Shown here: piece after piece, positions 40,959-55,149 of the stretch
Layout: each line of letters opens with the position of its first letter
How positions within the stretch are numbered: the stretch's first letter is position 1
Virus record (IMG/VR): IMGVR_UViG_3300046542_000227
Span: 124,001-188,000 of that record
Strand: one strand, 5' to 3'
DNA: 64,000 nucleotides
Position numbers and translations under genes: made by a program
Notes under the pieces: model-generated
The model's input: the letters and a program-made list of their open reading frames with translations, nothing else
The model's database searches: none
Told to the model about the DNA's origin: nothing

Positions 40959-41825
40959 ATGGATCGTTACAGCAGTCCGTTTATCGGTCAGAACGGTTAT
41001 GGCCGGGGCCAGTCCCCGGGCACTATCAACCTGGCTCAAGCCGGTACCCACACCATGGCACCGGATCTGGCGAACATCGCCAGTAACACACCACTCGTCG
41101 CACGGAACCTGGTACCGTTCCTCATCGAGCCGCCACGGTTCTTTGAATTCTTGCCGAACCGCGAACTGGCAGTCCGCTGCCTGAAAGCGTTCATCGAGAA
41201 GCACACCCGCACCATCAACGGTCTGAACCAGCAGATCTCGGTCGACACTGCCGATAACCCCTACGGTGGTTCCGGTGAAGCGATCAAGGTTGCGACCAAC
41301 GTTACCCGTGCCCAGTCGAACCCAACCTTCGGTGGTTGGGAACTGCAAGGCCGCGCGGTTACCCGCTTCATCAAGTGGTGGATCCAGTACGGTATTGGTG
41401 ACGAAAACACCAAGATCCCTCTGGTGGTAGCCGATGGTGCAGTACGGGCCGATCAGTATGATGCATCGTTCTACGGTGCTACCATCCTGTTCGTTGAACC
41501 GGACGCGTCCTTCTCCGAGCCGATCTCGGCTTGGTTGGGTACCAACATGTTCCCTCTGGCGACCCCGCCTTGGGAAGGTCGTAAGGATGCTGGCCAGTTG
41601 GGTCAGAACCTGGAGTTCGATATCGAGTTCTCCATGGTCTCCGACGTTTCTGTGGGCACTACCATCTTCGCTCGCGAAATGATGCGCTCCCTGAACCTGC
41701 GTGGCATGAACCCGAACGATCGTCGTCTGTGGTTCACCGGCGTTAGCGCCGACGTGGCAGCTGCTCAGAATGGCCTGCAACAGCAGCTCACTGAAGGCGC
41801 TGCTGCTCGTCAGAACGTTGGTTAA
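40959..41825 (+). CDS. Tail tube protein (phiKZ gp30-like)
   Basis: 288 aa directly after the sheath. Confidence 0.85.
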   Translation: MDRYSSPFIGQNGYGRGQSPGTINLAQAGTHTMAPDLANIASNTPLVARNLVPFLIEPPRFFEFLPNRELAVRCLKAFIEKHTRTINGLNQQISVDTADNPYGGSGEAIKVATNVTRAQSNPTFGGWELQGRAVTRFIKWWIQYGIGDENTKIPLVVADGAVRADQYDASFYGATILFVEPDASFSEPISAWLGTNMFPLATPPWEGRKDAGQLGQNLEFDIEFSMVSDVSVGTTIFAREMMRSLNLRGMNPNDRRLWFTGVSADVAAAQNGLQQQLTEGAAARQNVG

Positions 41826-41838
41826 GGAGTAATCCTTA

Positions 41839-42012
41839 ATGGCAGCCGTGTTGAATCAACCTACCTCCACAGCCGGGACTCCGGCACCCGCACAGGCAAC
41901 TGAGCGAAAGGCCCAGGGTCAACTGGTGTCCACCGGAGTCGCGGCTGCTCTCAACGGACTGGCTGGTGGTCTAGAGCAAGCTGCTAAAGAGCGTGCACTG
42001 GACAACCTGTAA
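41839..42012 (+). CDS. Candidate 57-aa Ala/Gly-rich microprotein (not in ORF track)
   Basis: AAGGAG RBS right after tube stop; hairpin follows its stop. Confidence 0.55.
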   Translation: MAAVLNQPTSTAGTPAPAQATERKAQGQLVSTGVAAALNGLAGGLEQAAKERALDNL

Positions 42013-42118
42013 AAACATACTGCCCTCCTCGATATGAGGAGGGCTTTATGCTGTCCACTGCATTTAGTCTGAGACCTATATCACTGAAGAGATAAACCAC
42101 CCAATCTAAGGAAGTGTT

Positions 42119-42385
42119 ATGTTCAAGTCTCTACTGGTTGTCATGCTATCTCTGTTCGCGATCTCGGCCTTTGCTGATACCGACGAGGAGATGTACAAGA
42201 ATAGCTACATGGTCATGTGCGAAGGTTACGTGTGCCAAGACCTGCGCAACAATGAATGGTTCCCAGTGGCCGATACTGAAGAACCACAGTACGGCTACGT
42301 GTTGCACTTCACCAAAGACTACACCGATGTGGAAGTACTCAAAGCCACGCCTTACATCCTAGAGCGACTTCGCGGGGAGCAGTAA
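42119..42385 (+). CDS. Small secreted/periplasmic protein
   Basis: Signal peptide MFKSLLVVMLSLFAISAFA; early promoter at 42076. Confidence 0.7.
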   Translation: MFKSLLVVMLSLFAISAFADTDEEMYKNSYMVMCEGYVCQDLRNNEWFPVADTEEPQYGYVLHFTKDYTDVEVLKATPYILERLRGEQ

Positions 42386-43035
42386 TGTCTAAAGTACACC
42401 AGTTGACACCAAAGCACGTTGAGGGTGTGGACTCGATGGGTAACCCCTTCGTGATCCACTTGTTGGGTTTTATGCCGTCCAATCTGGGTAGTCTGGCGGA
42501 ACTGCCTAACGTCTACCTGTACGAGCCCGAAAGCCAGTTCCACTTCTTCTTGCGGTTTGAGTTCGTTGGTGACATTAACACCACTCGGACTTTTATCAAC
42601 AACTATGAGTTGGACATCCTGACCAGCATGTATTGCGCTTTGATCAAAGCGCATATCCGTGATGCCGGGTTCAGTCTGCCTGAGCAAGTGGTGATCAGTG
42701 ACGTACACCAAATGCTACTCACCTTCCGGGATTCTGGCGTGTGTCATTCTTACGGGTGGTTGTACCGTGGGATGTCGCAAAGCTTTATCTTCGAGATGGG
42801 TGCAGTGTTCTTCCATGTCTATCGTGAAGAGAAGGCCGATCGTTGGTCTATCCCAATCGAGGTCAATGGCGTACGTCATCAGATCTACTTGATCACCAGT
42901 CCTACGAAAGTACGGCTGGATCCACAGACGGTGTTTGAAGGTAACGCCCAAGCGTACAGCGAACTCGAAGATTGGTTTAACAAGACCGTCAACGAATCGC
43001 CGTATACCCGGGCTGAGTTTGTAATGGTGCGGTAG
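42385..43035 (+). CDS. Hypothetical protein
   Basis: 216 aa, TAATG coupling. Confidence 0.6.
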   Translation: MSKVHQLTPKHVEGVDSMGNPFVIHLLGFMPSNLGSLAELPNVYLYEPESQFHFFLRFEFVGDINTTRTFINNYELDILTSMYCALIKAHIRDAGFSLPEQVVISDVHQMLLTFRDSGVCHSYGWLYRGMSQSFIFEMGAVFFHVYREEKADRWSIPIEVNGVRHQIYLITSPTKVRLDPQTVFEGNAQAYSELEDWFNKTVNESPYTRAEFVMVR

Positions 43036-43077
43036 ACGGCATAAGGGGAGGCTAGGCCTCCCCAGTGCTTTTTCTTT

Positions 43078-44313
43078 TTAGCGTTTGGTGTAGTAATCTT
43101 TCGTCATCGCACGCAGCACGATATACAGAAGGGTCCCGGTTCGCACAGCTGCGATCTGGGCCTCGTATTTATTCCGTCCCGTGGCTTGACGCACCAGCTT
43201 CTCAGCTTCAGTACGCAACAGCATTACCGATGGGTCGGTGGAACGCGAGGCTGTCAACAGTGCTTTGAGTTTGGCGATGTTGGTAGCAAGGTCATTACGC
43301 TGAACCGAAGGTAGACGGTTTACATAAAGGTGATCGAAGGAGTAGAGCAGCACTTCCTTAACGATCTCTTGCAGGTAGTTCTGATGCGGGGCGAAGTAGT
43401 TGTTCGACATGTAACGCAGTGTCGTAACCAACAATGGCTTCGGCATCGTGTTCATACCCGACGCTACGACGTCTACAAGCTCGTCTCGGATGAAGTTGCG
43501 CTCAGATGGGATAATGTCATTGATGTACCGCATAAACGACGCATAGCCGTTCTTACGGTCTTTGAGCACCATCTCACCATCAGCGTTGATCGTGGTATCT
43601 GACGTGGTCTTCACTCGCACGCCAGTGTCACTGAAGTGTTTGTGGATCGCGTAGATCTTCTTGATCAATTCACGGATACGAGATTGGGTATCGGTAACCG
43701 TACGGATCAACATGCCGTCTGGCTGGAAGTCCTGCAGGCAACGATAGTAGATCGACTTGGCCGACACAATGTCTTCAGCACGAGCACGGATCAAATCACG
43801 CCACGAACCATAACGACGAATGTCGAAACGACCGTTGAGGGCGAGGTAGGTCGCTGTCGCAACCTCTTTGTCTGCTGGGTACTGGAACCGCTTCACCAAC
43901 AACGAGGTGATAAAGCGATAGTGTAGAACCATGTACGCATGCACCATAGCCTCATGGCGCAACGATTGGGCAACACCCGTGGCTTTCATCAACCGATGGA
44001 CGATGTAGGCTGGTGTGTAGTTGAAGGCGTCACTCATGACGTTGAATTCATGGTTGATCGCATCGATCTTACGGAAGTCCGCAAGAAACAGATCTTCGTC
44101 GACTTCCAGTACGTCTTCGTACCAGCTGTCTCGGTCACTGTCAAAGAATTTGACGGGGTTAACCCCCAGGAGAACACCACCAAAGAAAGCAGAGTGGTCT
44201 TCATTACGGTTCATGAAACGGATGGAGTACTGAATCACCCGCTTACAGAACTCGGCATCGAATTTAACGTGATCGAATTGACGATCAAATACCTCTTTAA
44301 TCGTAACGCCCAT
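43078..44313 (-). CDS. Conserved virion protein (phiKZ gp32-like)
   Basis: 411 aa; size and position after tube gene. Confidence 0.65.
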   Translation of the reverse strand: MGVTIKEVFDRQFDHVKFDAEFCKRVIQYSIRFMNRNEDHSAFFGGVLLGVNPVKFFDSDRDSWYEDVLEVDEDLFLADFRKIDAINHEFNVMSDAFNYTPAYIVHRLMKATGVAQSLRHEAMVHAYMVLHYRFITSLLVKRFQYPADKEVATATYLALNGRFDIRRYGSWRDLIRARAEDIVSAKSIYYRCLQDFQPDGMLIRTVTDTQSRIRELIKKIYAIHKHFSDTGVRVKTTSDTTINADGEMVLKDRKNGYASFMRYINDIIPSERNFIRDELVDVVASGMNTMPKPLLVTTLRYMSNNYFAPHQNYLQEIVKEVLLYSFDHLYVNRLPSVQRNDLATNIAKLKALLTASRSTDPSVMLLRTEAEKLVRQATGRNKYEAQIAAVRTGTLLYIVLRAMTKDYYTKR

Positions 44314-44417
44314 GTCCCTGTACCGGTTGGGTTAAAAGTTCACAAGATTGAGCAGTCTCAAAAACAATACAAACCTAGATTATCCTCATGTTAAACAATC
44401 CACGCGAGGGCTTGATT

Positions 44418-44678
44418 ATGGATCTCTTCGATCTGGAACGTGAAGTAGCTGAACAAGAGAATGTACGCATTGCATTCATCCACCCCGAAAAGGACTTGGT
44501 GTTGACCAATTCCTATCGAACCCTGCATCCAGTTGCCTTGCCCGATGGCGCTGACGACAGCATGTTGGTAGACCGTGTTATTGACGTGGTGGGTCACGGT
44601 CGTCCATTCATGCTGTTGCTGGAAAACGAAGCCACTGTCTTCAATACCAAAACAGCACCACAAAAACAACTCAACTAA
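44418..44678 (+). CDS. Hypothetical protein
   Basis: GAGG RBS places start at 44418. Confidence 0.55.
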   Translation: MDLFDLEREVAEQENVRIAFIHPEKDLVLTNSYRTLHPVALPDGADDSMLVDRVIDVVGHGRPFMLLLENEATVFNTKTAPQKQLN

Positions 44679-44691
44679 GTAAGGGTTTCAC

Positions 44692-45459
44692 ATGGCTGAT
44701 AGCAAGCGGATTTTGATTCCATGGTCGGGTGGTGCCGACTCTACGTTGTTGATCGCCGAAGCACTACGTGCCAAAGATCGCATTTGGTACTGTACCTTCG
44801 AAGCGGGCCAACCTAATACCCAGATCATGGCAGAAGCAGTAGCTCGGGAAAAGTTAGAGGAACGGCTCAAGCGGCGTTTCGCTGAAGCGCCAGAGATGCA
44901 CCTACACCGGAGCAAACTGGTGTTGGATACCAGCGGTACCAACTTGCCGATGAAACAGCTTCCAGCATGGTTCATGCACTTGATCACCATGGTTGCTGAC
45001 AAAAGTGGTCAGTTCTATTTCGATGAGATCCATCTGGGTTACTTGCTCAACGATGATGCTGCCTATTCGCTTAGCAATTTGAAGTTAGCTTGGCACCACA
45101 TGTGTCTGGCTGTCTACGGGATTGACCGTGATCCACCGAAGCTGATGTTCCCATTGCTGCGTTATCGCAAAGGGCAAGTGTTGGCTGAGTTAACTCAATT
45201 GGGTCTGATCGACCTGATTTCGATCTGTGAGCTACCCCAGCTCTATGACGACGGTTGGCGTCAGTGTAACGAATGTCCATCCTGCCATAAACACAACACC
45301 GCCAAGGCCGTAGACGATCTGCACAATGGCATGCGCTGGCGTGGTGACTTGTTGGTTGATTACGATCACCGTACTAAACCGAATCCTGAACTGGTTGATG
45401 AAAGTCAACTTACCGAATACCCACTCGAAAAGGAAGCTACCTGTGAACAAACGTCTTAA
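44692..45459 (+). CDS. QueC-like PP-loop ATPase with C-terminal zinc site
   Basis: WSGGADST PP-loop; SIC-x12-CNECPSC zinc cluster as in QueC. Confidence 0.75.
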   Translation: MADSKRILIPWSGGADSTLLIAEALRAKDRIWYCTFEAGQPNTQIMAEAVAREKLEERLKRRFAEAPEMHLHRSKLVLDTSGTNLPMKQLPAWFMHLITMVADKSGQFYFDEIHLGYLLNDDAAYSLSNLKLAWHHMCLAVYGIDRDPPKLMFPLLRYRKGQVLAELTQLGLIDLISICELPQLYDDGWRQCNECPSCHKHNTAKAVDDLHNGMRWRGDLLVDYDHRTKPNPELVDESQLTEYPLEKEATCEQTS

Positions 45460-46213
45460 CGTAATGACCACCCTGGGCCAACTGCTGTCGATGCATATCG
45501 CTGACTACGCACGTGGTCGTGCTGGCCGCGCCCCCAAGCTGTCGATCCATGGCAAGCAGCAGAACATCAAGATGCAGTTCCAGATCCATGAGAAAGTCGT
45601 GGGTGAGTTGGTACTGGTCTGCCCGAAGAACGACCCGGATCCAGAGAACTACGTCGGCCGCTTCGGGAACTGGGATGTGACGCTGCCTGAGACCGAGGAC
45701 TGGGCACATGCGATCCGTAAGCTGCCACATGCCAAGCGTCAGGAACAGCGTGACTACTGGGCAGCTATGGACATCCTGTACATGATGGCCATGGTGGGCT
45801 TTAAGGTCGTTACCTTCGACGGTAAGAACAGTCACATCCATGCGGCTGGTGTATTGGCACCGGGTGGCGCTGAAGGCTATGGTCGTTTCCATTTCAACTT
45901 CAACGTAACTACGGCGTATGACTCACACCGCAACTTCTACGGTCAACACGGTGGTGCAATGCCTGTCCTACCGGATCACCTGAAGACGGATGAAGACCGT
46001 CAGGCTGAGATCAGTGCGGCGCTGCAGGATCCATCGACAGAAGTCGTACGAGTTGTACCTGGTGTTGAAGCTATTCACACCATCCGTGGTCGTGAGACCG
46101 GTGTGGTAACATTCGGCGCAATGGACCAGGTGACGCCTGAAGAAGCAATCCAGATCCAACAGGCGATTGCCACCGGTGGTTCTTATGAGGGTACCAAGAA
46201 TGAACCAGCCTGA
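45443..46213 (+). CDS. Hypothetical protein
   Basis: GTG start with AAGGAAG RBS, overlapping the QueC-like gene end. Confidence 0.6.
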   Translation: MNKRLNVMTTLGQLLSMHIADYARGRAGRAPKLSIHGKQQNIKMQFQIHEKVVGELVLVCPKNDPDPENYVGRFGNWDVTLPETEDWAHAIRKLPHAKRQEQRDYWAAMDILYMMAMVGFKVVTFDGKNSHIHAAGVLAPGGAEGYGRFHFNFNVTTAYDSHRNFYGQHGGAMPVLPDHLKTDEDRQAEISAALQDPSTEVVRVVPGVEAIHTIRGRETGVVTFGAMDQVTPEEAIQIQQAIATGGSYEGTKNEPA

Positions 46214-46619
46214 TCCATGCCAACTCACCAGAGCGCATCTCGACCAGTTCATGGACAAGCTGGCTGCACGTGCTCCATTCCGTAAAAGCATTGTGGTACC
46301 ACGTGACGATGGTCGTCGCGGTAAGGTGTTCCGCACCCAATGCGATGGCATCGAGATGGTGATGCCCTTACCACCAGGTGAGTACGTGGAACAACCGCCC
46401 GAATGGCAAGGATCAGTACCGCATCCAAAGGCTATGTACTACGACCCGCGATCGTTCGGTACTGCGCCGTACGAACCTGACCTAATCAGTCATATCGACG
46501 TGGTCGATGCGGCTGGTAACCGGGTAGATGTTGCTGCTGTACCGCAGCGCTATTTGATTGCCGAGTTCGAATCCGCGCCGCGCGCCGCGTCCGAAGTTTT
46601 GGCTAAGGGCGATGAGTAG
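46200..46619 (+). CDS. Hypothetical Pro-rich protein
   Basis: GAGG RBS, overlaps upstream gene. Confidence 0.55.
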   Translation: MNQPDPCQLTRAHLDQFMDKLAARAPFRKSIVVPRDDGRRGKVFRTQCDGIEMVMPLPPGEYVEQPPEWQGSVPHPKAMYYDPRSFGTAPYEPDLISHIDVVDAAGNRVDVAAVPQRYLIAEFESAPRAASEVLAKGDE

Positions 46620-47030
46620 CGCTTCGCTAATGTGAGTGTTTCCTTAAACACTTATCCATTACCAAGGGTTTCTGTTCTTTAGGGATTGACAGAATAAAGA
46701 CAGAGGGGGTAAACCCCTCTGATCTTATTTTGTTTTTTGATTTAAAGAGAAAATAAAAATACTAGATATATAGATTAATTGGGGGAGGGAGCCGGTTAGG
46801 CGACCGACTCCCAATTAATATCCTTATTCTTTAGTAATAACCCCCCTCCCCCTGTTTGGGGGGTCTTATTCCGTGTTGGGGTAAATCCACGAGTGAGTGA
46901 CAAAACACTCACCGTGTTAATCTCATACGGCAAAAAACCCTTCCCGAAGGAAGGGCTAGCTTTCGCTACAGATGGGTGCCCTGACAAATGGATACCCGAT
47001 TCCCAACCAAAGGAACATATCATTAAGGAT
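46620..47030. other. AT-rich intergenic region with clustered hairpins
   Basis: At least five inverted repeats plus an A/T tract at ~46720-46780. Confidence 0.7.
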
Positions 47031-47035
47031 TCGCT

Positions 47036-48025
47036 ATGCAAACGTGTGTTGTAGCCATCGTGGGTTTGGAGTTCACCGATAACTTCCGTCATCTGCCGCC
47101 AGTATTCGAAAAGCAACTCGGTGACGAAGACGTGCGCTTTCTGATCCACTCGACTCCGGTGACAGAACAACACAACGGTCGCTTGGTGTGCAACTACGAT
47201 CTACTGCTGGACGTGGGTTATGAAACCGCTCATCCGAAAGCGGACTACGTTTCCAAACGTTTGAGCAAGACCGATCAAGCCATTGAACTGGCGAGCATCG
47301 CTGCTGAGATCGGTGCACGGCATTTCGTTCCAGTTCCGGTACTGAGCAAGAAACCCAACCCGACCAATATCTACGACATGCTGCACATGCCACCGCTGGT
47401 GCTCATCAAGCCAACCGATGGGGCACGTGGTGTGGGACACATTGTGTTCGATAACACCAAAGCGAGTATGTTCAGGTTCTTGAACGAGTTGCGTAACCGT
47501 AGCCCAGAAGGTACGGTTGAGGAAGTCTTGGCCAAATACGCTGACGCCATCGAGCTCCACAATGGAACCTCGAACTATCCTGGCGAAGCGGCCTACATGT
47601 TGACCAGCCAATCGCTGATGGTCACTGGCTTGATCCGTGGCATCACCCAAGAAGTTCGTGTGGTTACCAATGCACATAGCGAAGCGACGTTGGTCAAAGT
47701 ACGTGAGCGTAAGAGCAACGTAGATCCAGCGTACGACAAGCAAGGTAAGTACGAACAAGCCACCGGCGCTAATCGTGATAACGACAGCCTGTACTACGAC
47801 CTCGATAGCGTGATTGCTAACGTCGATGTGTTGGCTGAAGTCAAAGCAATGCTCAAGCGACTGCCACCTCTGAACTCGGTGGACCTGTTCTTCAATGAGC
47901 GGGGTTGGGGTATCTTCGAATACTGCAACCAGTTTGGTACCGAAGCCTTCGAGATCGATGACTCGGTCAATCTACACACCAACCTGTTGGCGTCATTGTA
48001 CCTGAAGAAATTCAAACCAGAATAA
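47036..48025 (+). CDS. ATP-grasp fold ligase (RimK/GshB-like)
   Basis: LIKPTDGARGVG, EVRVV, SVDLF and IFEYCN match ATP-grasp motifs. Confidence 0.7.
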   Translation: MQTCVVAIVGLEFTDNFRHLPPVFEKQLGDEDVRFLIHSTPVTEQHNGRLVCNYDLLLDVGYETAHPKADYVSKRLSKTDQAIELASIAAEIGARHFVPVPVLSKKPNPTNIYDMLHMPPLVLIKPTDGARGVGHIVFDNTKASMFRFLNELRNRSPEGTVEEVLAKYADAIELHNGTSNYPGEAAYMLTSQSLMVTGLIRGITQEVRVVTNAHSEATLVKVRERKSNVDPAYDKQGKYEQATGANRDNDSLYYDLDSVIANVDVLAEVKAMLKRLPPLNSVDLFFNERGWGIFEYCNQFGTEAFEIDDSVNLHTNLLASLYLKKFKPE

Positions 48026-48099
48026 GAACTATATCACTGACCTGAATAATCCTACGCTAGGGACATAGCGAATAACTTTCCAACAACGGGACTTTACTC

Positions 48100-48456
48100 A
48101 TGCAGCAAAAATCCGAATTCCCTTTCGACGACCTTACCATGGAATCCGAACACGAAGTCTCGCGGGTCATCCGCTACTTCACGCTTCCCGGCATTGAACG
48201 TTGGGATGATCCCCAAACGGTCGAACACCACCTGCAGCAAACCAGCGGTGACTTCGCCTTGTTCTTCGCTACAGACGAACACCGGATCCCACGCATTGTC
48301 GTGGTCTTCGAAACCGGCTTCACTTTCAACTTCTACCTGTACCAAGTTGGTATCTCGCAGGATGATGCCGTGCGCTTGTTTAACGAGTTCATCGAAAAGA
48401 ACACCGATGCCGTTTGCGAGTTCATGCTCGAACATCCCCTGTGGTTGGCCGCTTAA
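48100..48456 (+). CDS. Acidic hypothetical protein co-transcribed with phuZ
   Basis: 118 aa between early promoter 48029 and phuZ; strong codon bias. Confidence 0.65.
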   Translation: MQQKSEFPFDDLTMESEHEVSRVIRYFTLPGIERWDDPQTVEHHLQQTSGDFALFFATDEHRIPRIVVVFETGFTFNFYLYQVGISQDDAVRLFNEFIEKNTDAVCEFMLEHPLWLAA

Positions 48457-48483
48457 TCCCCCTTTTCTACCTGGAGTAAAACC

Positions 48484-49482
48484 ATGCAACAAGCACAATT
48501 GCCAGCAGTACCAAAACTCGCCATCTTCTGTGCCGGTGCTTTCGGTATCACCACGGGCCTGCGTCAGCCTCAGAATGCTGATACCCGGGTTACCTACATC
48601 GACACCAGCGAAGCCAACCTGACCAGCGACATCGACGACGCCAAGTGCTACCGCATTCCAATGCCACCGGAAGCCGATGGTCGTGTAGTACGTGGCGGTG
48701 GTGGTCAAGATCGTCGCCGTACGGCCAAAGCGGCAATGCCACACATCGCTCCGATCCTGGAGCGTTTCGTGCCTGGCGCATTCAACCTGCTGGTGTTCTC
48801 GTGCTCGGGTGCATCCGGTTCGGTTATCTGCTCGTTGCTGGCTCGTCAACTGTCGGCCGCTGACCACAGCTTCCTGCTGCTGTGCGTTGGCGAAACCACC
48901 ACCACGAAATACCTGACCAACACCCGGGATACCTGGAAAGGTCTGGAGAACATGGCGCTGTCGACTGGCCGCCCATTCGTGATGTCCTACCACCACAACC
49001 GTCAAGGCGTGCCACAATCGGCCGTGGACCAAGATGTCGACTTCGTGATCGAAGCCGTCACCGCCCTGACCTGCCAGTTCAACAAAGACCTGGACGCCAG
49101 CGACATCCACAACGCCCTGAACTTCAACAACGTGACCTCGGTGCCACCACAACTGGCCACCATCTCGATCAGCGACAATCGCAAGACTGCCGCCGCCGTC
49201 ATGGAACCGATCACCCAACTGTCGCTCTACTGCGATCGCGACGAAGCCAGCGTCATCGGCACGCCGCATTACAGCAAGTTCGGCTACCCACAAGAACCAC
49301 TGGTCAGCGCTTTCGATCAGCTGCACTTCATCGTCAACACCATCTCGGTCGACGAGATCAGCAAAGATCTGCGTGAAGCCGAAACCGTGCAACAACAAGC
49401 TCACGGCAACTATCGCAAGCGCGCTGCGCTGGTGAATGTCCGTGATGACGAAGTGACCGCCGACGGCCTGGTTCTGTCTTAA
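48484..49482 (+). CDS. phuZ: Phage tubulin PhuZ
   Basis: CAGAFG, IDTS, GGGQDR, SGASGS signature variant, T7 loop LDASD, acidic C-tail DDEVTADGLV. Confidence 0.9.
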   Translation: MQQAQLPAVPKLAIFCAGAFGITTGLRQPQNADTRVTYIDTSEANLTSDIDDAKCYRIPMPPEADGRVVRGGGGQDRRRTAKAAMPHIAPILERFVPGAFNLLVFSCSGASGSVICSLLARQLSAADHSFLLLCVGETTTTKYLTNTRDTWKGLENMALSTGRPFVMSYHHNRQGVPQSAVDQDVDFVIEAVTALTCQFNKDLDASDIHNALNFNNVTSVPPQLATISISDNRKTAAAVMEPITQLSLYCDRDEASVIGTPHYSKFGYPQEPLVSAFDQLHFIVNTISVDEISKDLREAETVQQQAHGNYRKRAALVNVRDDEVTADGLVLS

Positions 49483-49500
49483 GTCACACGCCTAAAGATG

Positions 49501-49523
49501 GGGTGCCTTCGGGCACCCTTATC
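49501..49523 (+). terminator. Terminator hairpin after phuZ
   Basis: GGGTGCC-TTCG-GGCACCC followed by TTAT. Confidence 0.7.
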
Positions 49524-49603
49524 TTGTGGTAAATCCAATACCAAACTTTTTCTTTTTCTAATGGAGATGAAGCTATCGCATTTACACCCTGAGGAGTTAC
49601 CAG

Positions 49604-50107
49604 ATGGGGAAATCATTAACCAAGCAAATGGATGAGTTACTCGCCGATGACTTAGCGCTAGACCTCTTCCAGTTTACGGTGACCATTAAACACACATTGA
49701 AGCTTACTCGTGTGATCACGGGCTTCGTCTTTGCCTACAGTAAAGACAACCAGATCTACTACGACATGGTCCCATTGGTTTACGAACGCAATGGCATGCG
49801 AATCAAACTCCCCAAGTTTGCGATGCCCCCTGTGGTGAAGCAACGTATAGCCAAACATCAGTACCAGCGCTGGTATGTTTACAGTGACACGGTACTCTAT
49901 CCACTCCAAACGGCAAAACCCAATGTGCTCGAAGAATCCTTTATATTCACGGTAGACGATAACCCGTACTACCAAACACAAACCGCGTATCAAGAGGAAA
50001 CGATGTTCCTACGCAAGAAAGCATTGATGCATTGCCGACCCTTGAAGCCCGGATGGGGTGTTACATTGCGACGTAAACAAGTTGTAGAAAAGCTGGAACC
50101 AGCATAG
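49604..50107 (+). CDS. Hypothetical protein
   Basis: 167 aa, GAGGAG RBS. Confidence 0.6.
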   Translation: MGKSLTKQMDELLADDLALDLFQFTVTIKHTLKLTRVITGFVFAYSKDNQIYYDMVPLVYERNGMRIKLPKFAMPPVVKQRIAKHQYQRWYVYSDTVLYPLQTAKPNVLEESFIFTVDDNPYYQTQTAYQEETMFLRKKALMHCRPLKPGWGVTLRRKQVVEKLEPA

Positions 50108-50143
50108 ACCCCTCCCAGTGCCGGGAGGGGCTTATGTCGTTTT

Positions 50144-50509
50144 TTATTTCTGTGCTGGATCATTGGGTACGAGATAGAAGCGATAGGTCTCTTCAATCAA
50201 ACCTTCCCGTGATGGATGTGGATCCCAGTAGAGTGCATCACCTGACATCACCACACAATGGATCGATCCCCGTGGAGAAGGACCCGATGCAATACTGAGC
50301 ATGCCATCGTTGTGGGTATAACGCAGCGACAGGTGGTTATCCTCAAGCCAGTCTTCCACACGATCCCAGAACACCTCTGCCGAACAACCATCGTGATGGA
50401 AGTGCGGTACATCAGCCATCGGTCGATTCAGGTAAGTAGCAATACAAGCCTGCAGACAGTTCCCGAAGCGACCATTAGCTGGATCATGCAAGATGGACTG
50501 GTCGTGCAT
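50144..50509 (-). CDS. Papain-fold (C39-like) peptidase-like protein
   Basis: GNCLQAC, IHCVV and WDPHP give a Cys-His-Asp order; ATG abuts the upstream TAA. Confidence 0.55.
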   Translation of the reverse strand: MHDQSILHDPANGRFGNCLQACIATYLNRPMADVPHFHHDGCSAEVFWDRVEDWLEDNHLSLRYTHNDGMLSIASGPSPRGSIHCVVMSGDALYWDPHPSREGLIEETYRFYLVPNDPAQK

Positions 50510-51310
50510 TTAGATAGCCCCTACCATAGTGCGCAGTGTGCGACGGCGGGATTCTGGATCGTTGAAGTTCTGTGCCACGTTCTTCCACTTCTTCAGCGCC
50601 AGCTTGTAGTCTTCCAACGCGGAGGACCATTCATTGACGGCATCACCGAACACGCCGAGCTCTTGACCACCCGACAGGAACGCTTGACCGATCTTGACGC
50701 GATAGGTGTTGAAGATGTAAGCCTTGGTCGCCAGTACACAGAGTTCAGCAAAGTCCAAGATCGCTTGTGGGCGAATAAAGGTCAGCGCTTCATCGTTACC
50801 CAGACGGCAGCGCAAGAACGCAGCAGTATAAGGCAAGTAGGTGTACTTGACGATGAACGTGTTGTGGTTGATCAGGTTGATGTAGGAAGTAGCAGCTGGT
50901 GGAGTGCGCAGTGCCGAGTCGAGCACCTTACGCATTTCACCACCCATGGCCGATTCAGGGTAACGCATCACACCCGAGGCTACGCTGTAACCCAAGATGC
51001 CGAAGTGCACCGAGTAGATCTGACGGATCGGACGGTTCTGGGTGAGCTCTTCCGGGATGTGGTACATCACGGTGTATTGATCGATGTACTCGCTGGTGAC
51101 TTGACCGTCCAAAGGGATGTATGCCTCGGTGCCACCTACGATGTCCATGTCCACCAAAACCTTAGCATCGATGATCGCTTCTTGTAGGCGAGTCCGCATC
51201 GAGACCGGGCTGGAGCACATGTAAAAATCAGCCTGAGTAAAGAAGGCCTTCAAGATTTCTGGAGGGATTTCGAATTCGATGTCATCCAGAGCTTTAACCA
51301 ATGGGTTCAT
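50510..51310 (-). CDS. Conserved phiKZ-family protein (gp42-like by position)
   Basis: 266 aa with AGGAGG RBS and upstream TATG; synteny. Confidence 0.6.
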   Translation of the reverse strand: MNPLVKALDDIEFEIPPEILKAFFTQADFYMCSSPVSMRTRLQEAIIDAKVLVDMDIVGGTEAYIPLDGQVTSEYIDQYTVMYHIPEELTQNRPIRQIYSVHFGILGYSVASGVMRYPESAMGGEMRKVLDSALRTPPAATSYINLINHNTFIVKYTYLPYTAAFLRCRLGNDEALTFIRPQAILDFAELCVLATKAYIFNTYRVKIGQAFLSGGQELGVFGDAVNEWSSALEDYKLALKKWKNVAQNFNDPESRRRTLRTMVGAI

Positions 51311-51451
51311 AAAGCCTCCTAATTTGCCGTGTAAGGCGTTTTAACTAAATAAAGTACCCTCATACCTGATAGTATACTAGAGGGGGCGTATACGTGATCT
51401 AAAGGCGTTTCAGAACTACATCATAGACGTAGTTAACCTCGGGAACCACCT

Positions 51452-51787
51452 ATGAACAAACAAAACACGGCGATGTCTTACAAAATAGACATAGCGGCTG
51501 TGCTCAACGAGGTGCGCAATGTTCCGCCTACCCTCAATGGGTATCTGGTGGACGCTGATACGTTAGTTGACATATTCATACTGCGCACACTGAACTCATT
51601 CGAGGTCTGTACCTATTTCCCAACACCGCCGGTGATAACAGACCCGATCGTTCTGGCATGGATCGACAGCTTAGAATACGCAAAACGATTGTTGTGGCAA
51701 CTGTCCAAGGTCCCGCCGCAACACTCAGGAACACAGGTTTCGTATATACGTCAAGGCGAAAGCATTTGGCTATTCTACATCATTTAA
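51452..51787 (+). CDS. Hypothetical protein
   Basis: 111 aa; promoter variant CTACATCAT at 51416. Confidence 0.6.
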   Translation: MNKQNTAMSYKIDIAAVLNEVRNVPPTLNGYLVDADTLVDIFILRTLNSFEVCTYFPTPPVITDPIVLAWIDSLEYAKRLLWQLSKVPPQHSGTQVSYIRQGESIWLFYII

Positions 51788-51802
51788 CGGAATGCGAGAA
51801 AT

Positions 51803-52903
51803 ATGAGCGGTAAACTGTTCAGCCTGAATACCCGTTGCTACATCAGCCTCCTCCTCACTGTATCCGCCAACTACTGCAAACACCATAACGAGATCGCACA
51901 ATCAGGCCGCATTACTGAACCGTTCCACCGTACCTTGGTCACCCAACCGTTGATCCCATTCGATGCTCAACGCGCCATTGCGTTTATCCATGCCATGGTT
52001 AAAGCCGACGTGTCTTCGTTCTTGGCTTATGGCAAAGGCGATACTCAGTCCGACGTCATGGCTGAACTGTTGTTCGGCGAAGGCACTCAGTTGACCGGTG
52101 GTATCGGTCAGGTTGTGGATGACTTCATGTCGGTGGAAGAAGTCGATGACATTTATATGGACATCGATGGCCAGCTCTCACGGTTCTTGGAACGTGACAC
52201 GTGGGCGGTGGTTGACGTCTACGACATGGGCAAGTCGGTCAGCGTAGTCATTCAAGAAGACATGCGTATTAAGGAGTGGAAACAACTGCGTGGGTATCGC
52301 AGTACATTCACCCCAACGCTGGAACTTGAACTGTCTGACATGTTCAGCTACCTGCGCACCAAGACCAACCAGACCCTGAAGAAGATCGAAGTAAAGAAAG
52401 ACGAGGCTACCTTTACTGTGTGGCCGGGTGAACGTCTGGACTTCAAACCGATGTTGCTGGAAATGTTGCTGGTTCGTTATCCGAACCTGCGTACGGATTC
52501 CCAGATCGGTGCATCGACTGAACGTACTGCCGCTGGCGGTCCACGTAATGTTGAAATACTGGTGGCTGCAGGTCTGGTGAATAATGGCACTCAGGTTATT
52601 GACCTGAATGACCAACAGATCCGTACCGTCAACAACTTCATCGATCGTCTGGTTACGCCGGTCGTAGAATCCTACGCAGTACATCGCTTCATGCAGACGC
52701 TGGATCCACTGACTGTTTACACGGTCGAGATCACCAGCGCCGAGAAACTGGTCATCACCCGTCAAGACGACGACGTGGCGACTGTTACACCTGCTGACGA
52801 CAATGTGCGTTTGAAGGAACTGGCAGAATCCTACCTGCGTGGTGATTTCCTGCCAACCAAGGAACGTGAAGAAGCCGAACGCTACATTCAAGAAAACCAA
52901 TAA
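51803..52903 (+). CDS. Conserved phiKZ-family hypothetical protein
   Basis: 366 aa, biased codon usage, located in the gp43-gp49 interval. Confidence 0.6.
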   Translation: MSGKLFSLNTRCYISLLLTVSANYCKHHNEIAQSGRITEPFHRTLVTQPLIPFDAQRAIAFIHAMVKADVSSFLAYGKGDTQSDVMAELLFGEGTQLTGGIGQVVDDFMSVEEVDDIYMDIDGQLSRFLERDTWAVVDVYDMGKSVSVVIQEDMRIKEWKQLRGYRSTFTPTLELELSDMFSYLRTKTNQTLKKIEVKKDEATFTVWPGERLDFKPMLLEMLLVRYPNLRTDSQIGASTERTAAGGPRNVEILVAAGLVNNGTQVIDLNDQQIRTVNNFIDRLVTPVVESYAVHRFMQTLDPLTVYTVEITSAEKLVITRQDDDVATVTPADDNVRLKELAESYLRGDFLPTKEREEAERYIQENQ

Positions 52904-52951
52904 CAACGCTGAGCTCTGGGGTGACCCAGGGCTTATGCCCGGGCTACGACC

Positions 52952-53326
52952 ATGAGCAAGTCATTTATCTTCGTATTTGATCCCGAGATCTTATTGCCAG
53001 ATGGCCTGGCCAAGGAACCTTTTCGTAACAGTGAACACTACTTCCATGCCTTAGCATTCCTAACCAGCACGATCCGTGACTTTAATAGCGGTGTGAGTAT
53101 CTACCAAGGTGAGGATTACAACGAGAGTATGGATGAATGGTTTACCTCGTACATGGAGAACCACGACCTGTATCACCTAGAGGATGTTCGGGGCAGCATG
53201 ATGAAGAAAGCCACGCACATGCATAACCTGTTACCAGACGGAATCTTCGAACGGCTAGACATCCATGAGCTTAGACCTCGCGGTGTGTTCTATTCGGGGA
53301 TCATCCATGACATCGATTACCGTTAG
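52952..53326 (+). CDS. Hypothetical protein, tandem paralogue A
   Basis: FDPEILLP...RGVFYSGII. Confidence 0.6.
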   Translation: MSKSFIFVFDPEILLPDGLAKEPFRNSEHYFHALAFLTSTIRDFNSGVSIYQGEDYNESMDEWFTSYMENHDLYHLEDVRGSMMKKATHMHNLLPDGIFERLDIHELRPRGVFYSGIIHDIDYR

Positions 53327-53340
53327 TTTGGAAGCCTCTC

Positions 53341-53709
53341 ATGAGCAGAACCTTCTTAGCGTGTTTCAGCCCGGAAGACCTGCTGCCTAGAGATCCAGTC
53401 CTTAGGAAGCAGTATCGCTACGACATGGATTACTTTGACTCCCTAAGCATAGCTGCCGAAGCAATGCGGTTGCGTGCATGGAATCTGACCCATTCTAAAA
53501 AACGGACAGACAAACACTACAAAGCGATCGATGATATTGCCCATGGGCAGATCGAAGAACGGGTTGGGTTCAAGTACGTTCACATCGAAGAGATCTTAGC
53601 CGAGCGTGGGGAATACATGCAGCGGTTGTTACCGATGGGTGACATCAGCGACATGCGTTTGCATTGTTTACATGAACGTGGTGCCTTTTATACGGGGGTA
53701 TTGCAATGA
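53341..53709 (+). CDS. Hypothetical protein, tandem paralogue B
   Basis: FSPEDLLP...RGAFYTGVL. Confidence 0.6.
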   Translation: MSRTFLACFSPEDLLPRDPVLRKQYRYDMDYFDSLSIAAEAMRLRAWNLTHSKKRTDKHYKAIDDIAHGQIEERVGFKYVHIEEILAERGEYMQRLLPMGDISDMRLHCLHERGAFYTGVLQ

Positions 53710-54077
53710 AGGAGTTAATCGTCATGCCAATGACCCCCAAGAACAACATGTACGCTATCCGCATCACGGATCTGTTTACCGAACAGGAGATGGCTGTAGC
53801 CTTAACCCGGTTCAAGACCCGGCAAGGTGTGATCGAGTTCCTTGTAGACTTTACCGATTACACCTACATCTTCACCCATGATCTTACTGCGAAAGAGGTG
53901 GATCTGGGTAAGGTGCCACATGTCTTCGATGCGATTGTCAATGCGGCTCGACGACTGCGTTCGATCATCGGGTTCTCAGACACACGCCAAGTCGACAGCT
54001 ACCGGCTTACCCGCACAACGGTGTTCATCGTAGTCAGATACGAGGTCCCAACCAATGAACATACTGGTGACCTTTGA
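53706..54077 (+). CDS. Hypothetical protein
   Basis: 123 aa, ATGA overlap. Confidence 0.6.
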   Translation: MKELIVMPMTPKNNMYAIRITDLFTEQEMAVALTRFKTRQGVIEFLVDFTDYTYIFTHDLTAKEVDLGKVPHVFDAIVNAARRLRSIIGFSDTRQVDSYRLTRTTVFIVVRYEVPTNEHTGDL

Positions 54078-54564
54078 ATCAAGGTCGTTACAGTTTGGCC
54101 TATCCAAGTTTGACGATCATGAATCGGTTAAGGTAGCCATTACGTTGGTACTCCAATGGTTCCTTAACGCGGTGCATAGAAAGCTAACCCCTGACGACGT
54201 TATTGATAACATCGCACAGGTGGTTAGCGATACTTACGTTTATGCCGAGTATATGCTTGGCGACAATAGTTTGATCGACAATCGTACTGGGGTAGTGTCA
54301 ACCCTCAATTATCCAACGGTGCACAGTGAGTCTGATAAAAATTACCGGTTTGGCGAATACAGTACAGCCCATAGCAACTTGTACTGTCGTTACGGTGAAA
54401 TAGTCGAACACATCGTGCTGAACTACGCACGTCAAGCGATGGGGTTTCTTCAGACCCTAGAGCAAGACAAGCACGGCACCAGCATTCAGTGCTTGGAATA
54501 CACCGAGCGGTATATAGCTGCCCTCGTGCATTGCCGGAATCTTATCGAGTACAACAATGAATGA
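54055..54564 (+). CDS. Hypothetical protein
   Basis: 169 aa, GAGG RBS. Confidence 0.6.
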   Translation: MNILVTFESRSLQFGLSKFDDHESVKVAITLVLQWFLNAVHRKLTPDDVIDNIAQVVSDTYVYAEYMLGDNSLIDNRTGVVSTLNYPTVHSESDKNYRFGEYSTAHSNLYCRYGEIVEHIVLNYARQAMGFLQTLEQDKHGTSIQCLEYTERYIAALVHCRNLIEYNNE

Positions 54565-55063
54565 CATCGTACGTACTGCCCCGTTTCATGCCCACGTAAT
54601 GGTGGACACTACTTTCGTCATGGAACAGTTCCGCCCGATCATGACGATGATGGAAGCCTGCATCTCCAATGCTGATGCTGCCATGTACCGCGCCTTCGAT
54701 ATCGATGGTGCCTACATGCGTCTGTTCGAAGCAGCGGATCACTTCCTAGCTTTCGAGCTGGGACGAAAGCGGGGCAACATTGGCTTTGACTTCTATATAC
54801 AGGAGTACTTTGCCCAACCTGCCCAGTACCTCATGGCTAACCAAGACTTCATGCGTGCTGGTGGTATCTACTTCGCCAATGCCGTGGGTTACCTAACCCG
54901 TTGCCTGAACCTCGCTAGACTCAATGCTGAGGAGATCGGTGCGGTGGTGGTTGAGGTTGACTCCACCCCGTATAACGGATGGGGGTTGTTTACCTACATC
55001 GTGACTGCTCATTTTGACAATCACCTGTATGTAGATGTACAAACTCCCGGCATGGTCTACTGA
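54557..55063 (+). CDS. Hypothetical protein
   Basis: 168 aa, overlaps upstream stop. Confidence 0.6.
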   Translation: MNDIVRTAPFHAHVMVDTTFVMEQFRPIMTMMEACISNADAAMYRAFDIDGAYMRLFEAADHFLAFELGRKRGNIGFDFYIQEYFAQPAQYLMANQDFMRAGGIYFANAVGYLTRCLNLARLNAEEIGAVVVEVDSTPYNGWGLFTYIVTAHFDNHLYVDVQTPGMVY

Positions 55064-55149
55064 ACGGTATGTGAAAAGAACAACCGATCTTGACGTCCGT
55101 GACTAATGACAGAATAAATCGGATACCAAGATCGTTTAGGAGCATCACC

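What the first reader, a model, noticed from the sequence alone, without database searches (positions are those of the whole stretch)
47036..49482. ATP-grasp ligase next to the phage tubulin: possible PhuZ- or host-protein-tagging system
ATP-grasp enzymes include RimK (C-terminal glutamylation) and eukaryotic tubulin-tyrosine/glutamate ligases. Here one lies two genes upstream of phuZ, whose acidic C-tail drives filament assembly, with an acidic 118-aa gene in between. With the nearby QueC-like enzyme and the Ntn and papain-like peptidases, this suggests a writer/eraser toolkit for peptide tags. Adjacency is the only link, and an early promoter at 48029 separates the ligase from phuZ.
Basis: inference. 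Interest (0 to 1): 0.6.

Follow-up and report, generated by a model that had tools for sequence, protein, structure and literature searches.

The report
Accessory phage ATP-grasp ligase, not PhuZ-linked
The gene beside the phage tubulin really is an ATP-grasp ligase, from an unnamed family found on phage-like contigs, but its position next to PhuZ is a quirk of one small lineage and nothing shows that it modifies PhuZ.

Summary
Window 47036-48025 (+) encodes a 329-aa protein with no Pfam or PHROG hit, yet its AlphaFold2 model (pLDDT 89) is an ATP-grasp fold (LysX/ArgX Z 14.9/14.8, RimK 12.7). It carries the ATP-grasp catalytic residues, including the ExR motif typical of peptide-bond-forming ligases. 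PhuZ (48484-49482), the acidic 118-aa gene, a QueC-like gene and a promoter-like motif at 48029 are all real.

- **Adjacency** exists only in the closest relatives (49-70% identical ligases).
- **Distant ligase-bearing genomes** have PhuZ 45-110 kb away.
- **Three Xoo-sp14-type genomes** have the ligase and chimallin but no PhuZ.
- **phiKZ, 201phi2-1 and PhiPA3** have PhuZ but no ligase.
- **Two close relatives** deleted the ligase and kept the promoter, the 118-aa gene and PhuZ.

The ligase belongs to a large unnamed family (478 clusters), seen here only on jumbo-phage genomes and unannotated metagenome contigs. The canonical ExN motif is replaced by Ex[C/S/Q]xQ.

Most likely it is a stand-alone, dispensable accessory carboxylate-amine ligase acting on a host or phage target. 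The substrate is unknown. A loose, non-obligate association with the QueC-like gene recurs in two clades.

The parts
47036..48025 (+). 329-aa divergent ATP-grasp ligase (AG). Key residues: linker Lys K78; K125 plus the G129-A-R-G-V-G134 loop; E206-x-R208; R223 and Q241-A-T-G; D283; E295-Y-C297-N-Q299.
   Evidence: ORF. AF2 model and fold searches. Family alignment and residue conservation. All 7 SNPs listed in an independent soil-metagenome contig are synonymous.
46620..47035 (+). Unique, highly structured, conserved intergenic region upstream of AG. It holds terminator-like hairpins at 46701-46721 and 46844-46863, a long hairpin at 46761-46835 and a hairpin at 46938-46955.
   Evidence: Terminator scan. 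RNA fold z = -6.7. Conserved in relatives, including those without AG. 92% nt identity to L037 against 73% for AG. Not repeated elsewhere in the genome.
48029..48037 (+). Promoter-like motif CTATATCAC between AG and the 118-aa gene. It is probably a virion-RNAP early-type promoter serving the 118-aa gene and PhuZ.
   Evidence: 13 copies genome-wide, all on the + strand in the pattern count. One copy lies upstream of chimallin. The motif type matches PMC7598289. It is retained in L033, where AG is deleted.
48100..48456 (+). 118-aa acidic protein of unknown function that co-inherits with PhuZ.
   Evidence: pI 4.5. Orthologues sit directly upstream of PhuZ in Noxifer, L012, L033 and L037. AF2 pLDDT 87 with no significant structural match, best Z 4.5.
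48484..49482 (+). PhuZ phage tubulin.
   Evidence: PF22334 at 96 bits; phrog_4733 at E 1e-88. 71% nt identity to Noxifer PhuZ.
49500..49519 (+). Terminator-like hairpin after PhuZ.
44692..45459 (+). QueC-family PP-loop ATPase (SGGADS motif and a C-terminal Cys cluster). It is a loose, non-obligate neighbour of AG.
   Evidence: PF06508 at 30.7 bits; phrog_1550. It sits upstream of AG in two distant clades. It is absent from five AG-bearing genomes.
45443..46619 (+). Variable gene 'c41', read here as two overlapping ORFs in different frames (45443-46213 and 46167-46619). It fills the space between the QueC-like gene and AG.
   Evidence: A single 593-aa ORF in L012 and 737 aa in Noxifer. tblastn shows the frame change.

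Best explanation
The 329-aa protein is a catalytically competent, stand-alone ATP-grasp carboxylate-amine ligase. It belongs to a large unnamed family that I saw only on jumbo-phage genomes and unannotated, phage-like metagenome contigs.

By analogy with the ExR-bearing ATP-grasp assemblage (RimK, LysX/ArgX, GshB, Ddl), it should work in three steps: bind ATP-Mg between the central and C-terminal domains, phosphorylate a substrate carboxylate to an acyl-phosphate, and pass the acyl group to an amine to form an amide or peptide-like bond.

It is a dispensable accessory gene. It sits in a variable, mosaic island between a conserved structured intergenic element and the promoter of the 118-aa gene and PhuZ. 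Its neighbourhood to PhuZ is lineage-specific synteny, not a functional coupling.

Its substrate is most likely a host or phage component other than PhuZ, either a protein carboxylate or a metabolite.

Shown: the fold, the conserved catalytic residues, purifying selection, the phyletic pattern and the gene losses. Inferred: the ligase chemistry, that the enzyme is active, and the class of substrate.
For: - Fold: AF2 pLDDT 89. ATP-grasp enzymes fill the top of every structure search.
- Catalytic template, as listed in PMC4431377, conserved over 174 family members: K78 in 170/174; K125 as K or R in 174/174, with the Gly-rich loop; D283 in 174/174; E295 in 174/174; E206 in 171/174; R208 in 174/174.
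- Selection: all 7 SNPs listed in AG from an independent metagenome contig are synonymous.
- Family size: 478 representative clusters at E<=1e-3, none named.
- Provenance: every contig over 190 kb that I examined is a jumbo-phage genome.
- Accessory status: truncated to 60 aa in Noxifer and to a 7-codon stub in L033. Absent from phiKZ, 201phi2-1 and PhiPA3. AG is 73% nt identical to L037, while flanking genes and the upstream intergenic region are 86-97% identical.
- No conserved neighbour across about 8 clades.
- Own transcription context: terminator-like hairpins upstream, and a separate promoter motif downstream for the 118-aa gene and PhuZ.
Against: - No Pfam, PHROG or PDB sequence-level hit reaches significance. 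Profile alignment to E. coli RimK recovers only the K125/Gly-loop segment.
- The canonical ExN Mg2+-binding Asn is replaced by C (96), S (58) or Q (15) of 174. Metal binding, or even activity, could therefore differ from textbook ATP-grasp enzymes.
- No substrate, partner or product is identified.
- Some ATP-grasp folds are kinases (ITPK1 Z 13.2, PPIP5K2) or non-enzymatic (synapsin Z 13.4), and these score almost as well as the ligases.
- No expression data: no RNA runs hold this phage.
Confidence: 0.7

Rival explanations
1. PhuZ-tagging: AG adds amino acids such as Glu or Tyr to the acidic C-terminal tail of PhuZ, or to the 118-aa protein, to tune filament dynamics, like TTL/TTLL enzymes on eukaryotic tubulin.
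For: AG lies 459 nt upstream of PhuZ on the same strand, with no terminator between them. The arrangement is kept in L004/L012, L005 and L037. TTLL11 and TTLL6 appear among the structural matches, at Z 12.5 and 10.2.
Against: - Linkage is absent outside the closest clade. PhuZ lies 45-110 kb away in PCH45, G001, G002, G006 and G007.
- AG is present but PhuZ is undetectable in Xoo-sp14, G004 and G005.
- PhuZ is present but AG is absent in phiKZ, 201phi2-1 and PhiPA3.
- AG was deleted in Noxifer and L033 with the 118-aa gene and PhuZ intact.
- A separate promoter motif precedes the 118-aa gene.
- AG evolves as a mosaic island, whereas PhuZ and the 118-aa gene are conserved.
- TTL-family chains score lower than LysX/ArgX, synapsin and RimK.
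- The 118-aa protein ends in ...LWLAA, with no acidic C-terminus.
Confidence: 0.04
2. Host- or phage-protein tagging for takeover or counter-defence: AG ligates an amino acid or peptide onto a carboxylate of a host protein (as RimK does on S6) or of a defence component, possibly together with the QueC-like carboxylate-activating enzyme.
For: - The ExR motif places AG in the assemblage made up almost entirely of peptide-like bond ligases (PMC4431377).
- The best structural neighbours, LysX/ArgX, and RimK further down the list, act on protein C-terminal Glu.
- The patchy, mosaic, accessory distribution is typical of conflict genes.
- Family members lie near a Tad2-like gene (L028) and near a PRPP-synthetase-like plus NAPRTase-like pair (L007).
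- The QueC-like gene lies within 1.5 kb upstream of AG in two clades that are only about 30% identical.
- QueC-family enzymes are now known to conjugate a nucleobase to protein in defence systems (10.1101/2025.04.06.647259 and PMC13279940, seen).
Against: - No target is identified and there is no conserved partner gene.
- Five AG-bearing genomes have no QueC-family gene, and Noxifer keeps the QueC-like gene without AG.
- The anti-defence neighbours are several kb away, in gene-dense phage DNA.
- The Z-score margin over small-molecule ligases and kinases is only 1-2 units.
Confidence: 0.35
3. Small-molecule ligase or kinase: AG makes or modifies a metabolite, such as a dipeptide, a glutathione-like compound or a nucleotide derivative, or it phosphorylates a small molecule in phage-directed metabolism.
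For: - Many ATP-grasp neighbours in the fold searches are small-molecule enzymes: Ddl/VanA, BacD, GshB, PurT/PurK, ITPK1 and DcsG at Z 11-13.
- Sub-threshold Pfam hits go to GSH-S_ATP.
- Distant members sit among nucleotide and cofactor genes: thymidylate synthase in PCH45; thymidylate kinase in L011; HD_4, Thg1, PRPP-synthetase-like and NAPRTase in L007; a radical-SAM cluster in clade C.
- Invariant polar residues in the small N-terminal domain (N53, D55, R75) would suit a defined small ligand.
Against: No pathway context is conserved between clades. In clade C AG is antisense to the radical-SAM genes. No metabolite-binding domain or fused enzyme was found: the fusion extensions have no Pfam hit and no match to neighbouring genes.
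Confidence: 0.3
4. Inactive or structural ATP-grasp-like protein, like synapsin: loss of the ExN Asn means AG only binds a nucleotide or acts as a scaffold.
For: The Asn of ExN is replaced in 173 of 174 members. Synapsin is among the top structural matches.
Against: Every other catalytic position is essentially invariant across 174 divergent sequences (K78, K125, R208, D283, E295). A conserved Q/E two residues after the replaced Asn (170/174) could take over the metal ligand role. A comparable shift, ExGD, is documented for R2K.3 in PMC4431377.
Confidence: 0.08

Closest known systems
LysX/ArgX amino-group-carrier-protein ligases and RimK (RimK/LysX/GshB group of ATP-grasp ligases)
   Same: Best structural matches: 5k2m and 3vpb at Z 14.9 and 14.8 with about 240 aligned residues, and RimK at Z 12.7. 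AG shares the single-polypeptide three-domain layout of about 300-330 aa, the Lys plus Gly-rich loop, ExR, the Mg-binding Asp and the Glu of ExN.
   Different: Only 10-12% identity, and no Pfam RimK or GSH-S_ATP hit above threshold. The N-terminal 60 residues are predicted as six short beta-strands with no helix before residue 78. The Asn of ExN is replaced by C, S or Q, with a conserved Q/E at +4. No LysW-like or S6-like substrate gene is nearby.
Tubulin tyrosine ligase / TTLL glutamylases
   Same: ATP-grasp fold. TTLL11 Z 12.5, TTLL6 Z 10.2, TTL Z 10.4, tubulin glutamylase Z 8.9.
   Different: They are no closer than many unrelated ATP-grasp enzymes, and there is no PF03133 hit. AG lacks the microtubule-binding extensions. 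Gene linkage with the phage tubulin is not conserved.
R2K-clade ATP-grasp enzymes (CDC123, R2K.2, R2K.3), the ATP-grasp peptide ligases previously noted in jumbo phages (PMC7824862)
   Same: Sporadic presence in phages, predicted protein-modifying ligases, ExR motif. R2K.3 also has a non-canonical ExN (ExGD).
   Different: R2K lacks the linker Lys and the ssxGbGl loop (PMC4431377). AG has both: K78 and G-A-R-G-V-G. Only 1 of 31 members gives a weak R2K_3 hit, at E 0.019. R2K was reported in subgroup 2.2 jumbo phages, and no hit mentioned phiKZ-like nucleus-forming phages.
Hypothetical proteins Xoo-sp14 gp94 (QNR51785.1) and PCH45 QFP93101.1
   Same: The only homologues in cultured phages: 29.5% and 23% identity with full-length coverage. 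They are the BFVD top structural hits, at TM 0.80 and 0.75.
   Different: Both are annotated only as hypothetical proteins. They lie in different genomic contexts: no PhuZ in Xoo-sp14, and PhuZ 45 kb away in PCH45.

Membership tests
ATP-grasp superfamily | Three-domain ATP-grasp fold | tested here: met
   AF2 pLDDT 89.1 and pTM 0.86. Foldseek found 178 PDB matches at E<=0.001, and the 50 listed are all ATP-grasp enzymes. VIA Z 14.9 to 10 for more than 35 ATP-grasp entries, spanning residues 1-329.
ATP-grasp superfamily | Lys in the linker before the central (RAGNYA) domain | tested here: met
   K78 sits at the start of helix 78-92 and is conserved in 170/174 members. Its structural role is inferred from position, not from coordinates.
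ATP-grasp superfamily | Lys at the end of strand 2 of the central domain, followed by the ssxGbGl loop | tested here: met
   V-L-I-K125-P-T-D-G-A-R-G-V-G. K or R in 174/174, G129 in 168, G132 in 157. hhalign aligns this segment to the RimK segment LVVKLVEGTQGIG.
ATP-grasp superfamily | Acidic Mg2+ ligand in strand 4 of the C-terminal domain | tested here: met
   D283, in S-V-D-L-F on strand 281-287, is conserved in 174/174.
ATP-grasp superfamily | ExN motif at the end of the last conserved strand | tested here: not met
   E295 is conserved in 174/174, but the Asn position (297) is C 96, S 58, Q 15 and N 1. Q299/E299 is conserved in 170/174, giving Ex[C/S/Q]xQ.
Peptide/amide-bond-forming ATP-grasp assemblage (RimK, LysX, GshB, Ddl, TTL and others) | [quoted passage not shown] | tested here: met
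   E206 in 171/174 and R208 in 174/174, on strand 203-211. The criterion comes from PMC4431377.
Pfam RimK (PF08443) / GSH-S_ATP (PF02955) | Score above the Pfam gathering threshold | tested here: not met
   No hit for the window protein. PF08443 is absent from the whole phage genome. GSH-S_ATP is sub-threshold in 6 of 31 members, best E 0.00098.
LysX/ArgX-LysW system | Adjacent small carrier protein with a Zn ribbon and an acidic C-terminal Glu | tested here: not met
   Downstream small proteins differ between clades and none ends in an acidic tail. The p118 model has no LysW-like match, best Z 4.5.
R2K clade | Absence of the linker Lys and of the ssxGbGl loop, with a second K/R in the loop | tested here: not met
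   The linker K78 and a canonical loop are both present (definition).
TTL/TTLL tubulin-modifying ligases | PF03133 domain and functional association with a tubulin substrate | tested here: not met
   No PF03133 hit. TTL-family Z scores of 8.9-12.5 are no better than those of unrelated ATP-grasp enzymes. Genomic association with PhuZ is not conserved. Enzymatic action on PhuZ cannot be tested with these tools.
PhuZ (phage tubulin), for the neighbouring gene | TubZ_C_2 domain and PhuZ PHROG profile | tested here: met
   PF22334 at 96 bits against 27; phrog_4733 at E 1.1e-88 over residues 10-331.
Nucleus-forming (chimallin-encoding) jumbo phages, for the host genome | Chimallin (nuclear shell protein) homologue | tested here: met
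   G000:185185-186957 (window 61185-62957) is 40% identical to phiKZ gp54, E 5.9e-115.

The most novel reading that the evidence does not exclude
The family is a phage-specific protein-tagging ligase, RimK/LysX-like in chemistry. It would add an amino acid or peptide to a carboxylate of a host factor or defence protein. In some lineages it would work as a cassette with the phage QueC-like carboxylate-activating enzyme, for example to mimic, block or reverse QueC-dependent protein conjugation in CBASS type IV or Qat defence. That would make it a new kind of phage counter-defence by post-translational modification.
Probability: 0.12. Interest if true: 0.75.

Novelty: new member of a known kind. 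Interest (0 to 1): 0.3.

Why it matters
The attractive idea of a prokaryotic 'tubulin code', with a phage TTL-like writer acting on PhuZ, is not supported. Effort should not go there first.

What remains is still useful. This is a sizeable, unnamed ATP-grasp family (478 clusters at 50% identity) that current annotation libraries miss. Here it was seen only on jumbo-phage genomes and unannotated, phage-like contigs. It has an altered metal-binding motif and the gain, loss and mosaic behaviour typical of host-interaction or counter-defence genes.

Two cultured phages carry it, Serratia phage PCH45 and Xanthomonas phage Xoo-sp14, so its function can be tested directly. Naming the family would improve jumbo-phage annotation.

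Tried and rejected
- Pfam and PHROGs on AG, the 118-aa protein and their neighbours gave no hit for either protein.
- phmmer and profile hmmsearch of AG against PDB sequences returned only chance hits.
- hhalign of the family profile against E. coli RimK aligned only the Lys/Gly-loop segment, with probability 1.5%.
- Complex prediction of AG with full-length PhuZ gave no support (ipSAE 0.00 in both runs).
- Rosetta-stone search: seven longer family members carry N- or C-terminal extensions, but these have no Pfam domain and no similarity to any neighbouring gene or to the phage genome.
- The candidate conserved neighbour 'c45' is adjacent to AG in PCH45 and L011. In this genome its homologue lies 83 kb away, so I treated the adjacency as chance.
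- The invariant Cys297 as a possible catalytic nucleophile was rejected. Across 174 members the position is C, S or Q.
- An Rfam scan of the structured intergenic region gave only a weak manA hit (21.6 bits against a gathering score of 55.2) and a spurious miRNA hit.
- RNA evidence: no RNA run holds this phage. Only soil, rhizosphere and wetland DNA metagenomes do.
- Fold searches of the 118-aa protein found nothing above Z 4.5 except its Noxifer orthologue.
- A sigma-70 promoter scan found no more sites than shuffled sequence.
Full report
**What is there**

The window is part of a 267,320-bp phage genome with direct terminal repeats (G000:124001-188000). The genome encodes a chimallin homologue at window 61185-62957, 40% identical to phiKZ gp54 (E 6e-115). 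It also encodes PhuZ. It is therefore a nucleus-forming, phiKZ-like jumbo phage. Its nearest cultured relative is Pseudomonas phage Noxifer, at 71% nt identity over PhuZ.

The flagged interval holds three + strand genes:
- a 329-aa ORF at 47036-48025, here called AG;
- a 118-aa ORF at 48100-48456;
- PhuZ at 48484-49482, with PF22334 at 96 bits and phrog_4733 at E 1e-88.

The 118-aa protein is acidic, with pI 4.5. A QueC-family gene lies at 44692-45459 (PF06508, 30.7 bits).

**Is AG an ATP-grasp enzyme?**

Sequence libraries do not see it. There was no Pfam or PHROG hit, and nothing in PDB by phmmer or by a 31-sequence profile.

Structure does see it.
- The AlphaFold2 model built on alignment A1 is confident, with pLDDT 89.1 and pTM 0.86.
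- Every leading match in four libraries is an ATP-grasp enzyme.
  - Foldseek against PDB gave RimK, Ddl, synapsin and PPIP5K2 at E about 1e-7.
  - VIA-align gave LysX/ArgX at Z 14.9 and 14.8, synapsin 13.4, ITPK1 13.2, VanA 12.9, RimK 12.7, BacD 12.6 and TTLL11 12.5. More than 35 further ATP-grasp entries scored Z>=10, spanning residues 1-329.
  - ESM-Atlas clusters carried RimK, GSH-S_ATP and ATP-grasp_3.
  - BFVD gave viral ATP-grasp proteins.
- Six of 31 family members also give sub-threshold GSH-S_ATP hits, best E 0.00098.

**Catalytic residues**

Burroughs et al. (PMC4431377) list the superfamily template. The table shows how AG and 173 relatives fit it.

| Template feature | AG residue | Conservation (of 174) | Status |
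|---|---|---|---|
| Linker Lys | K78 | 170 | met |
| Strand-2 Lys plus ssxGbGl loop | K125, then D-G-A-R-G-V-G | K or R in 174 | met |
| Acidic Mg ligand | D283 | 174 | met |
| Glu of ExN | E295 | 174 | met |
| Asn of ExN | C297 | C 96, S 58, Q 15, N 1 | not met |
| ExR motif | E206, R208 | 171, 174 | met |

- The ExR motif marks the assemblage [quoted passage not shown].
- Where the Asn of ExN is replaced, a Q or E two residues further on is conserved in 170 of 174 members. The family signature is therefore Ex[C/S/Q]xQ.
- The cysteine in the window protein is not family-invariant, so it is unlikely to be a nucleophile.
- AG is not an R2K-clade enzyme, because it keeps the linker Lys and the canonical loop.

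**AG is a live gene**

In an independent soil-metagenome contig, all seven SNPs listed in AG are synonymous.

**Size and range of the family**

The word-based search found 33 relatives. The exhaustive profile search found 478 representative clusters at E<=1e-3, of which 364 are at E<=1e-10. All are unnamed metagenomic proteins.

Wherever the contig exceeds about 190 kb it is a 193-290-kb jumbo-phage genome. Shorter contigs show only unannotated, phage-like gene content.

In cultured phages only Xanthomonas phage Xoo-sp14 and Serratia phage PCH45 have it, and both copies are annotated as hypothetical.

**Is it linked to PhuZ?**

Only in the closest relatives. In L004/L012 (54% identical AG), L005 (49%) and L037/L038 (70%), AG sits one or two small genes upstream of PhuZ. 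The whole region is syntenic there in any case.

Elsewhere the pattern breaks down.

| Genome or phage | AG | PhuZ | AG-PhuZ distance |
|---|---|---|---|
| PCH45 | present | present | about 45 kb |
| G002 | present | present | about 70 kb |
| G006 | present | present | about 72 kb |
| G007 | present | present | about 107 kb |
| G001 | present | present | about 110 kb |
| Xoo-sp14, G004, G005 | present (chimallin shown in Xoo-sp14 and G004) | none detected | - |
| phiKZ, 201phi2-1, PhiPA3 | no homologue at profile E<=0.1 | present | - |
| Noxifer | first 60 residues only (gp029, 81 aa, 38% identity) | present | - |
| L033 (268.7-kb phage) | 7-codon stub | present | - |

- For the Xoo-sp14-type genomes, PhuZ was sought with both a PhuZ protein query and the PHROG profile. 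G004 and G005 are 99-100% complete by CheckV.
- phiKZ and 201phi2-1 are the phages in which PhuZ and its acidic C-terminal 'knuckle' were characterised (PMC3678025).
- In L033 the stub runs straight into the same CTATATCAC promoter region, followed by intact 118-aa and PhuZ genes.

So the 118-aa gene and PhuZ form a conserved unit with their own promoter. AG has been lost from in front of that unit in two relatives, Noxifer and L033, which carry remnants of different length.

Against the close relative L037, identity varies gene by gene.

| Feature | nt identity to L037 |
|---|---|
| AG | 73% |
| Intergenic region upstream of AG | 92% |
| 118-aa gene | 90% |
| PhuZ | 86% |
| Gene for the 411-aa protein (43078-44313, - strand) | 91% |

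AG is therefore a mosaic, fast-changing island, unlike PhuZ.

**Transcription context**

Two terminator-like hairpins, at 46701-46721 and 46844-46863, precede AG. None lies between AG and PhuZ, and one follows PhuZ at 49500-49519.

The motif at 48029, CTATATCAC, occurs 13 times in the genome. All copies are on the + strand and none on the - strand, against about one expected per strand. The five copies inside the window all lie in intergenic DNA. One copy lies 160 nt upstream of chimallin.

This matches the roughly 10-nt AT-rich early-promoter type described for RNAP-encoding jumbo phages (PMC7598289). The promoter is therefore real. That it is 'early' is inferred.

**Other neighbours**

No gene is consistently adjacent to AG across about eight clades.

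The only recurrent association is with the QueC-like gene.
- It lies within 1.5 kb upstream of AG in the window clade and in a second clade (L013, L042, L043).
- The AG and QueC-like proteins of that clade are only about 24-32% identical to the window's.
- The association is not obligate. Five AG-bearing genomes have no QueC-family gene, and Noxifer keeps the QueC-like gene without AG.

Other contexts include:
- a radical-SAM gene cluster, with AG antisense to it, in clade C;
- HD_4, Thg1, PRPP-synthetase-like and NAPRTase genes in L007;
- thymidylate synthase in PCH45;
- a Tad2-like gene in L028.

The 118-aa protein folds confidently (pLDDT 87) but matches nothing known, with a best Z of 4.5. 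It has neither a Zn ribbon nor an acidic C-terminus, so it is not a LysW-like carrier.

**Verdict**

AG is best explained as a stand-alone, dispensable accessory carboxylate-amine ligase of a new, unnamed ATP-grasp family seen so far only in phage contexts. The mechanism is inferred from the conserved template: an acyl-phosphate intermediate followed by amide bond formation. The substrate is unknown.

| Substrate hypothesis | My estimate |
|---|---|
| Host or phage protein carboxylate | about 0.35 |
| Small molecule | about 0.30 |
| PhuZ | about 0.04 |

These are rough, separate estimates and do not sum to one.

The complex prediction of AG with PhuZ gave no support.

Noticed in passing
window 46620-47035: This 416-nt intergenic region occurs once in the genome and is strongly structured (RNA fold z = -6.7). 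It is better conserved than the flanking genes: 92% nt identity to L037 against 73% for AG. It is retained in Noxifer and L033, which lack AG. It contains a long hairpin at 46761-46835 and a hairpin at 46938-46955 with compensatory changes between phages. It could be an ncRNA or a regulatory element. Rfam gave only a weak manA hit (21.6 bits against a gathering score of 55.2).
   Followed up: partly
window 5302, 9497, 42076, 48029, 61023 (and 8 more in G000): CTATATCAC is a strand-specific motif with 13 + strand copies and none on the - strand in the 267-kb genome. The five copies in the window are intergenic. One copy lies 160 nt upstream of the chimallin gene. It is a likely early (virion RNAP) promoter consensus for this phage lineage.
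   Followed up: partly
window 45443-46619: The homologue of a single 593-aa ORF (L012), 737 aa in Noxifer gp028, is read here as two overlapping ORFs in different frames: 45443-46213 and 46167-46619. This could be a frameshift, a pseudogene or two genes. An independent contig (X3) covering 45857-46343 showed no indel there.
   Followed up: partly
L003/L032 (Noxifer gp029) and L033:1007-1290: The ATP-grasp gene is deleted in two relatives, to different extents. Noxifer keeps an 81-aa ORF equal to the N-terminal domain only. L033 keeps a 7-codon stub (MRTIVNY*) joined to the CTATATCAC promoter region of the 118-aa gene and PhuZ.
   Followed up: yes
window 39400-55950 vs L037: Divergence from a close relative is mosaic, gene by gene. 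AG, the QueC-like gene, the 121-aa gene at 50144-50509 and the ORFs of 88, 216, 124 and 122 aa are 57-74% nt identical. Interleaved genes are 86-97% identical. This suggests cassette-like exchange or rapid evolution of accessory genes.
   Followed up: partly
L015, L016, L017, L019 (IMG/VR jumbo-phage contigs): In one clade the ATP-grasp homologue sits antisense inside a cluster of at least two kinds of radical-SAM enzyme genes (with the CxxxCxxC motif), some in multiple paralogous copies.
   Followed up: partly
MT939492.1 (Xoo-sp14), G004, G005: These Xoo-sp14-type genomes have the ATP-grasp gene but no detectable PhuZ, by either a protein query or the PHROG profile. G004 and G005 are 99-100% complete. 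Chimallin was checked and found in Xoo-sp14 and G004. These look like PhuZ-less nucleus-forming phages.
   Followed up: yes
L007:11635-13038 and L028:8068-8634: Distant family members lie a few kb from a PRPP-synthetase-like plus NAPRTase-like gene pair. From memory this pair resembles the phage NAD+ reconstitution pathway. Another member lies next to a Tad2-like gene, so these are accessory, counter-defence-type regions.
   Followed up: no
It has no Pfam hit, only phrog_5845 (unknown function). It belongs to the conserved block with DUF7484, independent of AG.
   Followed up: no
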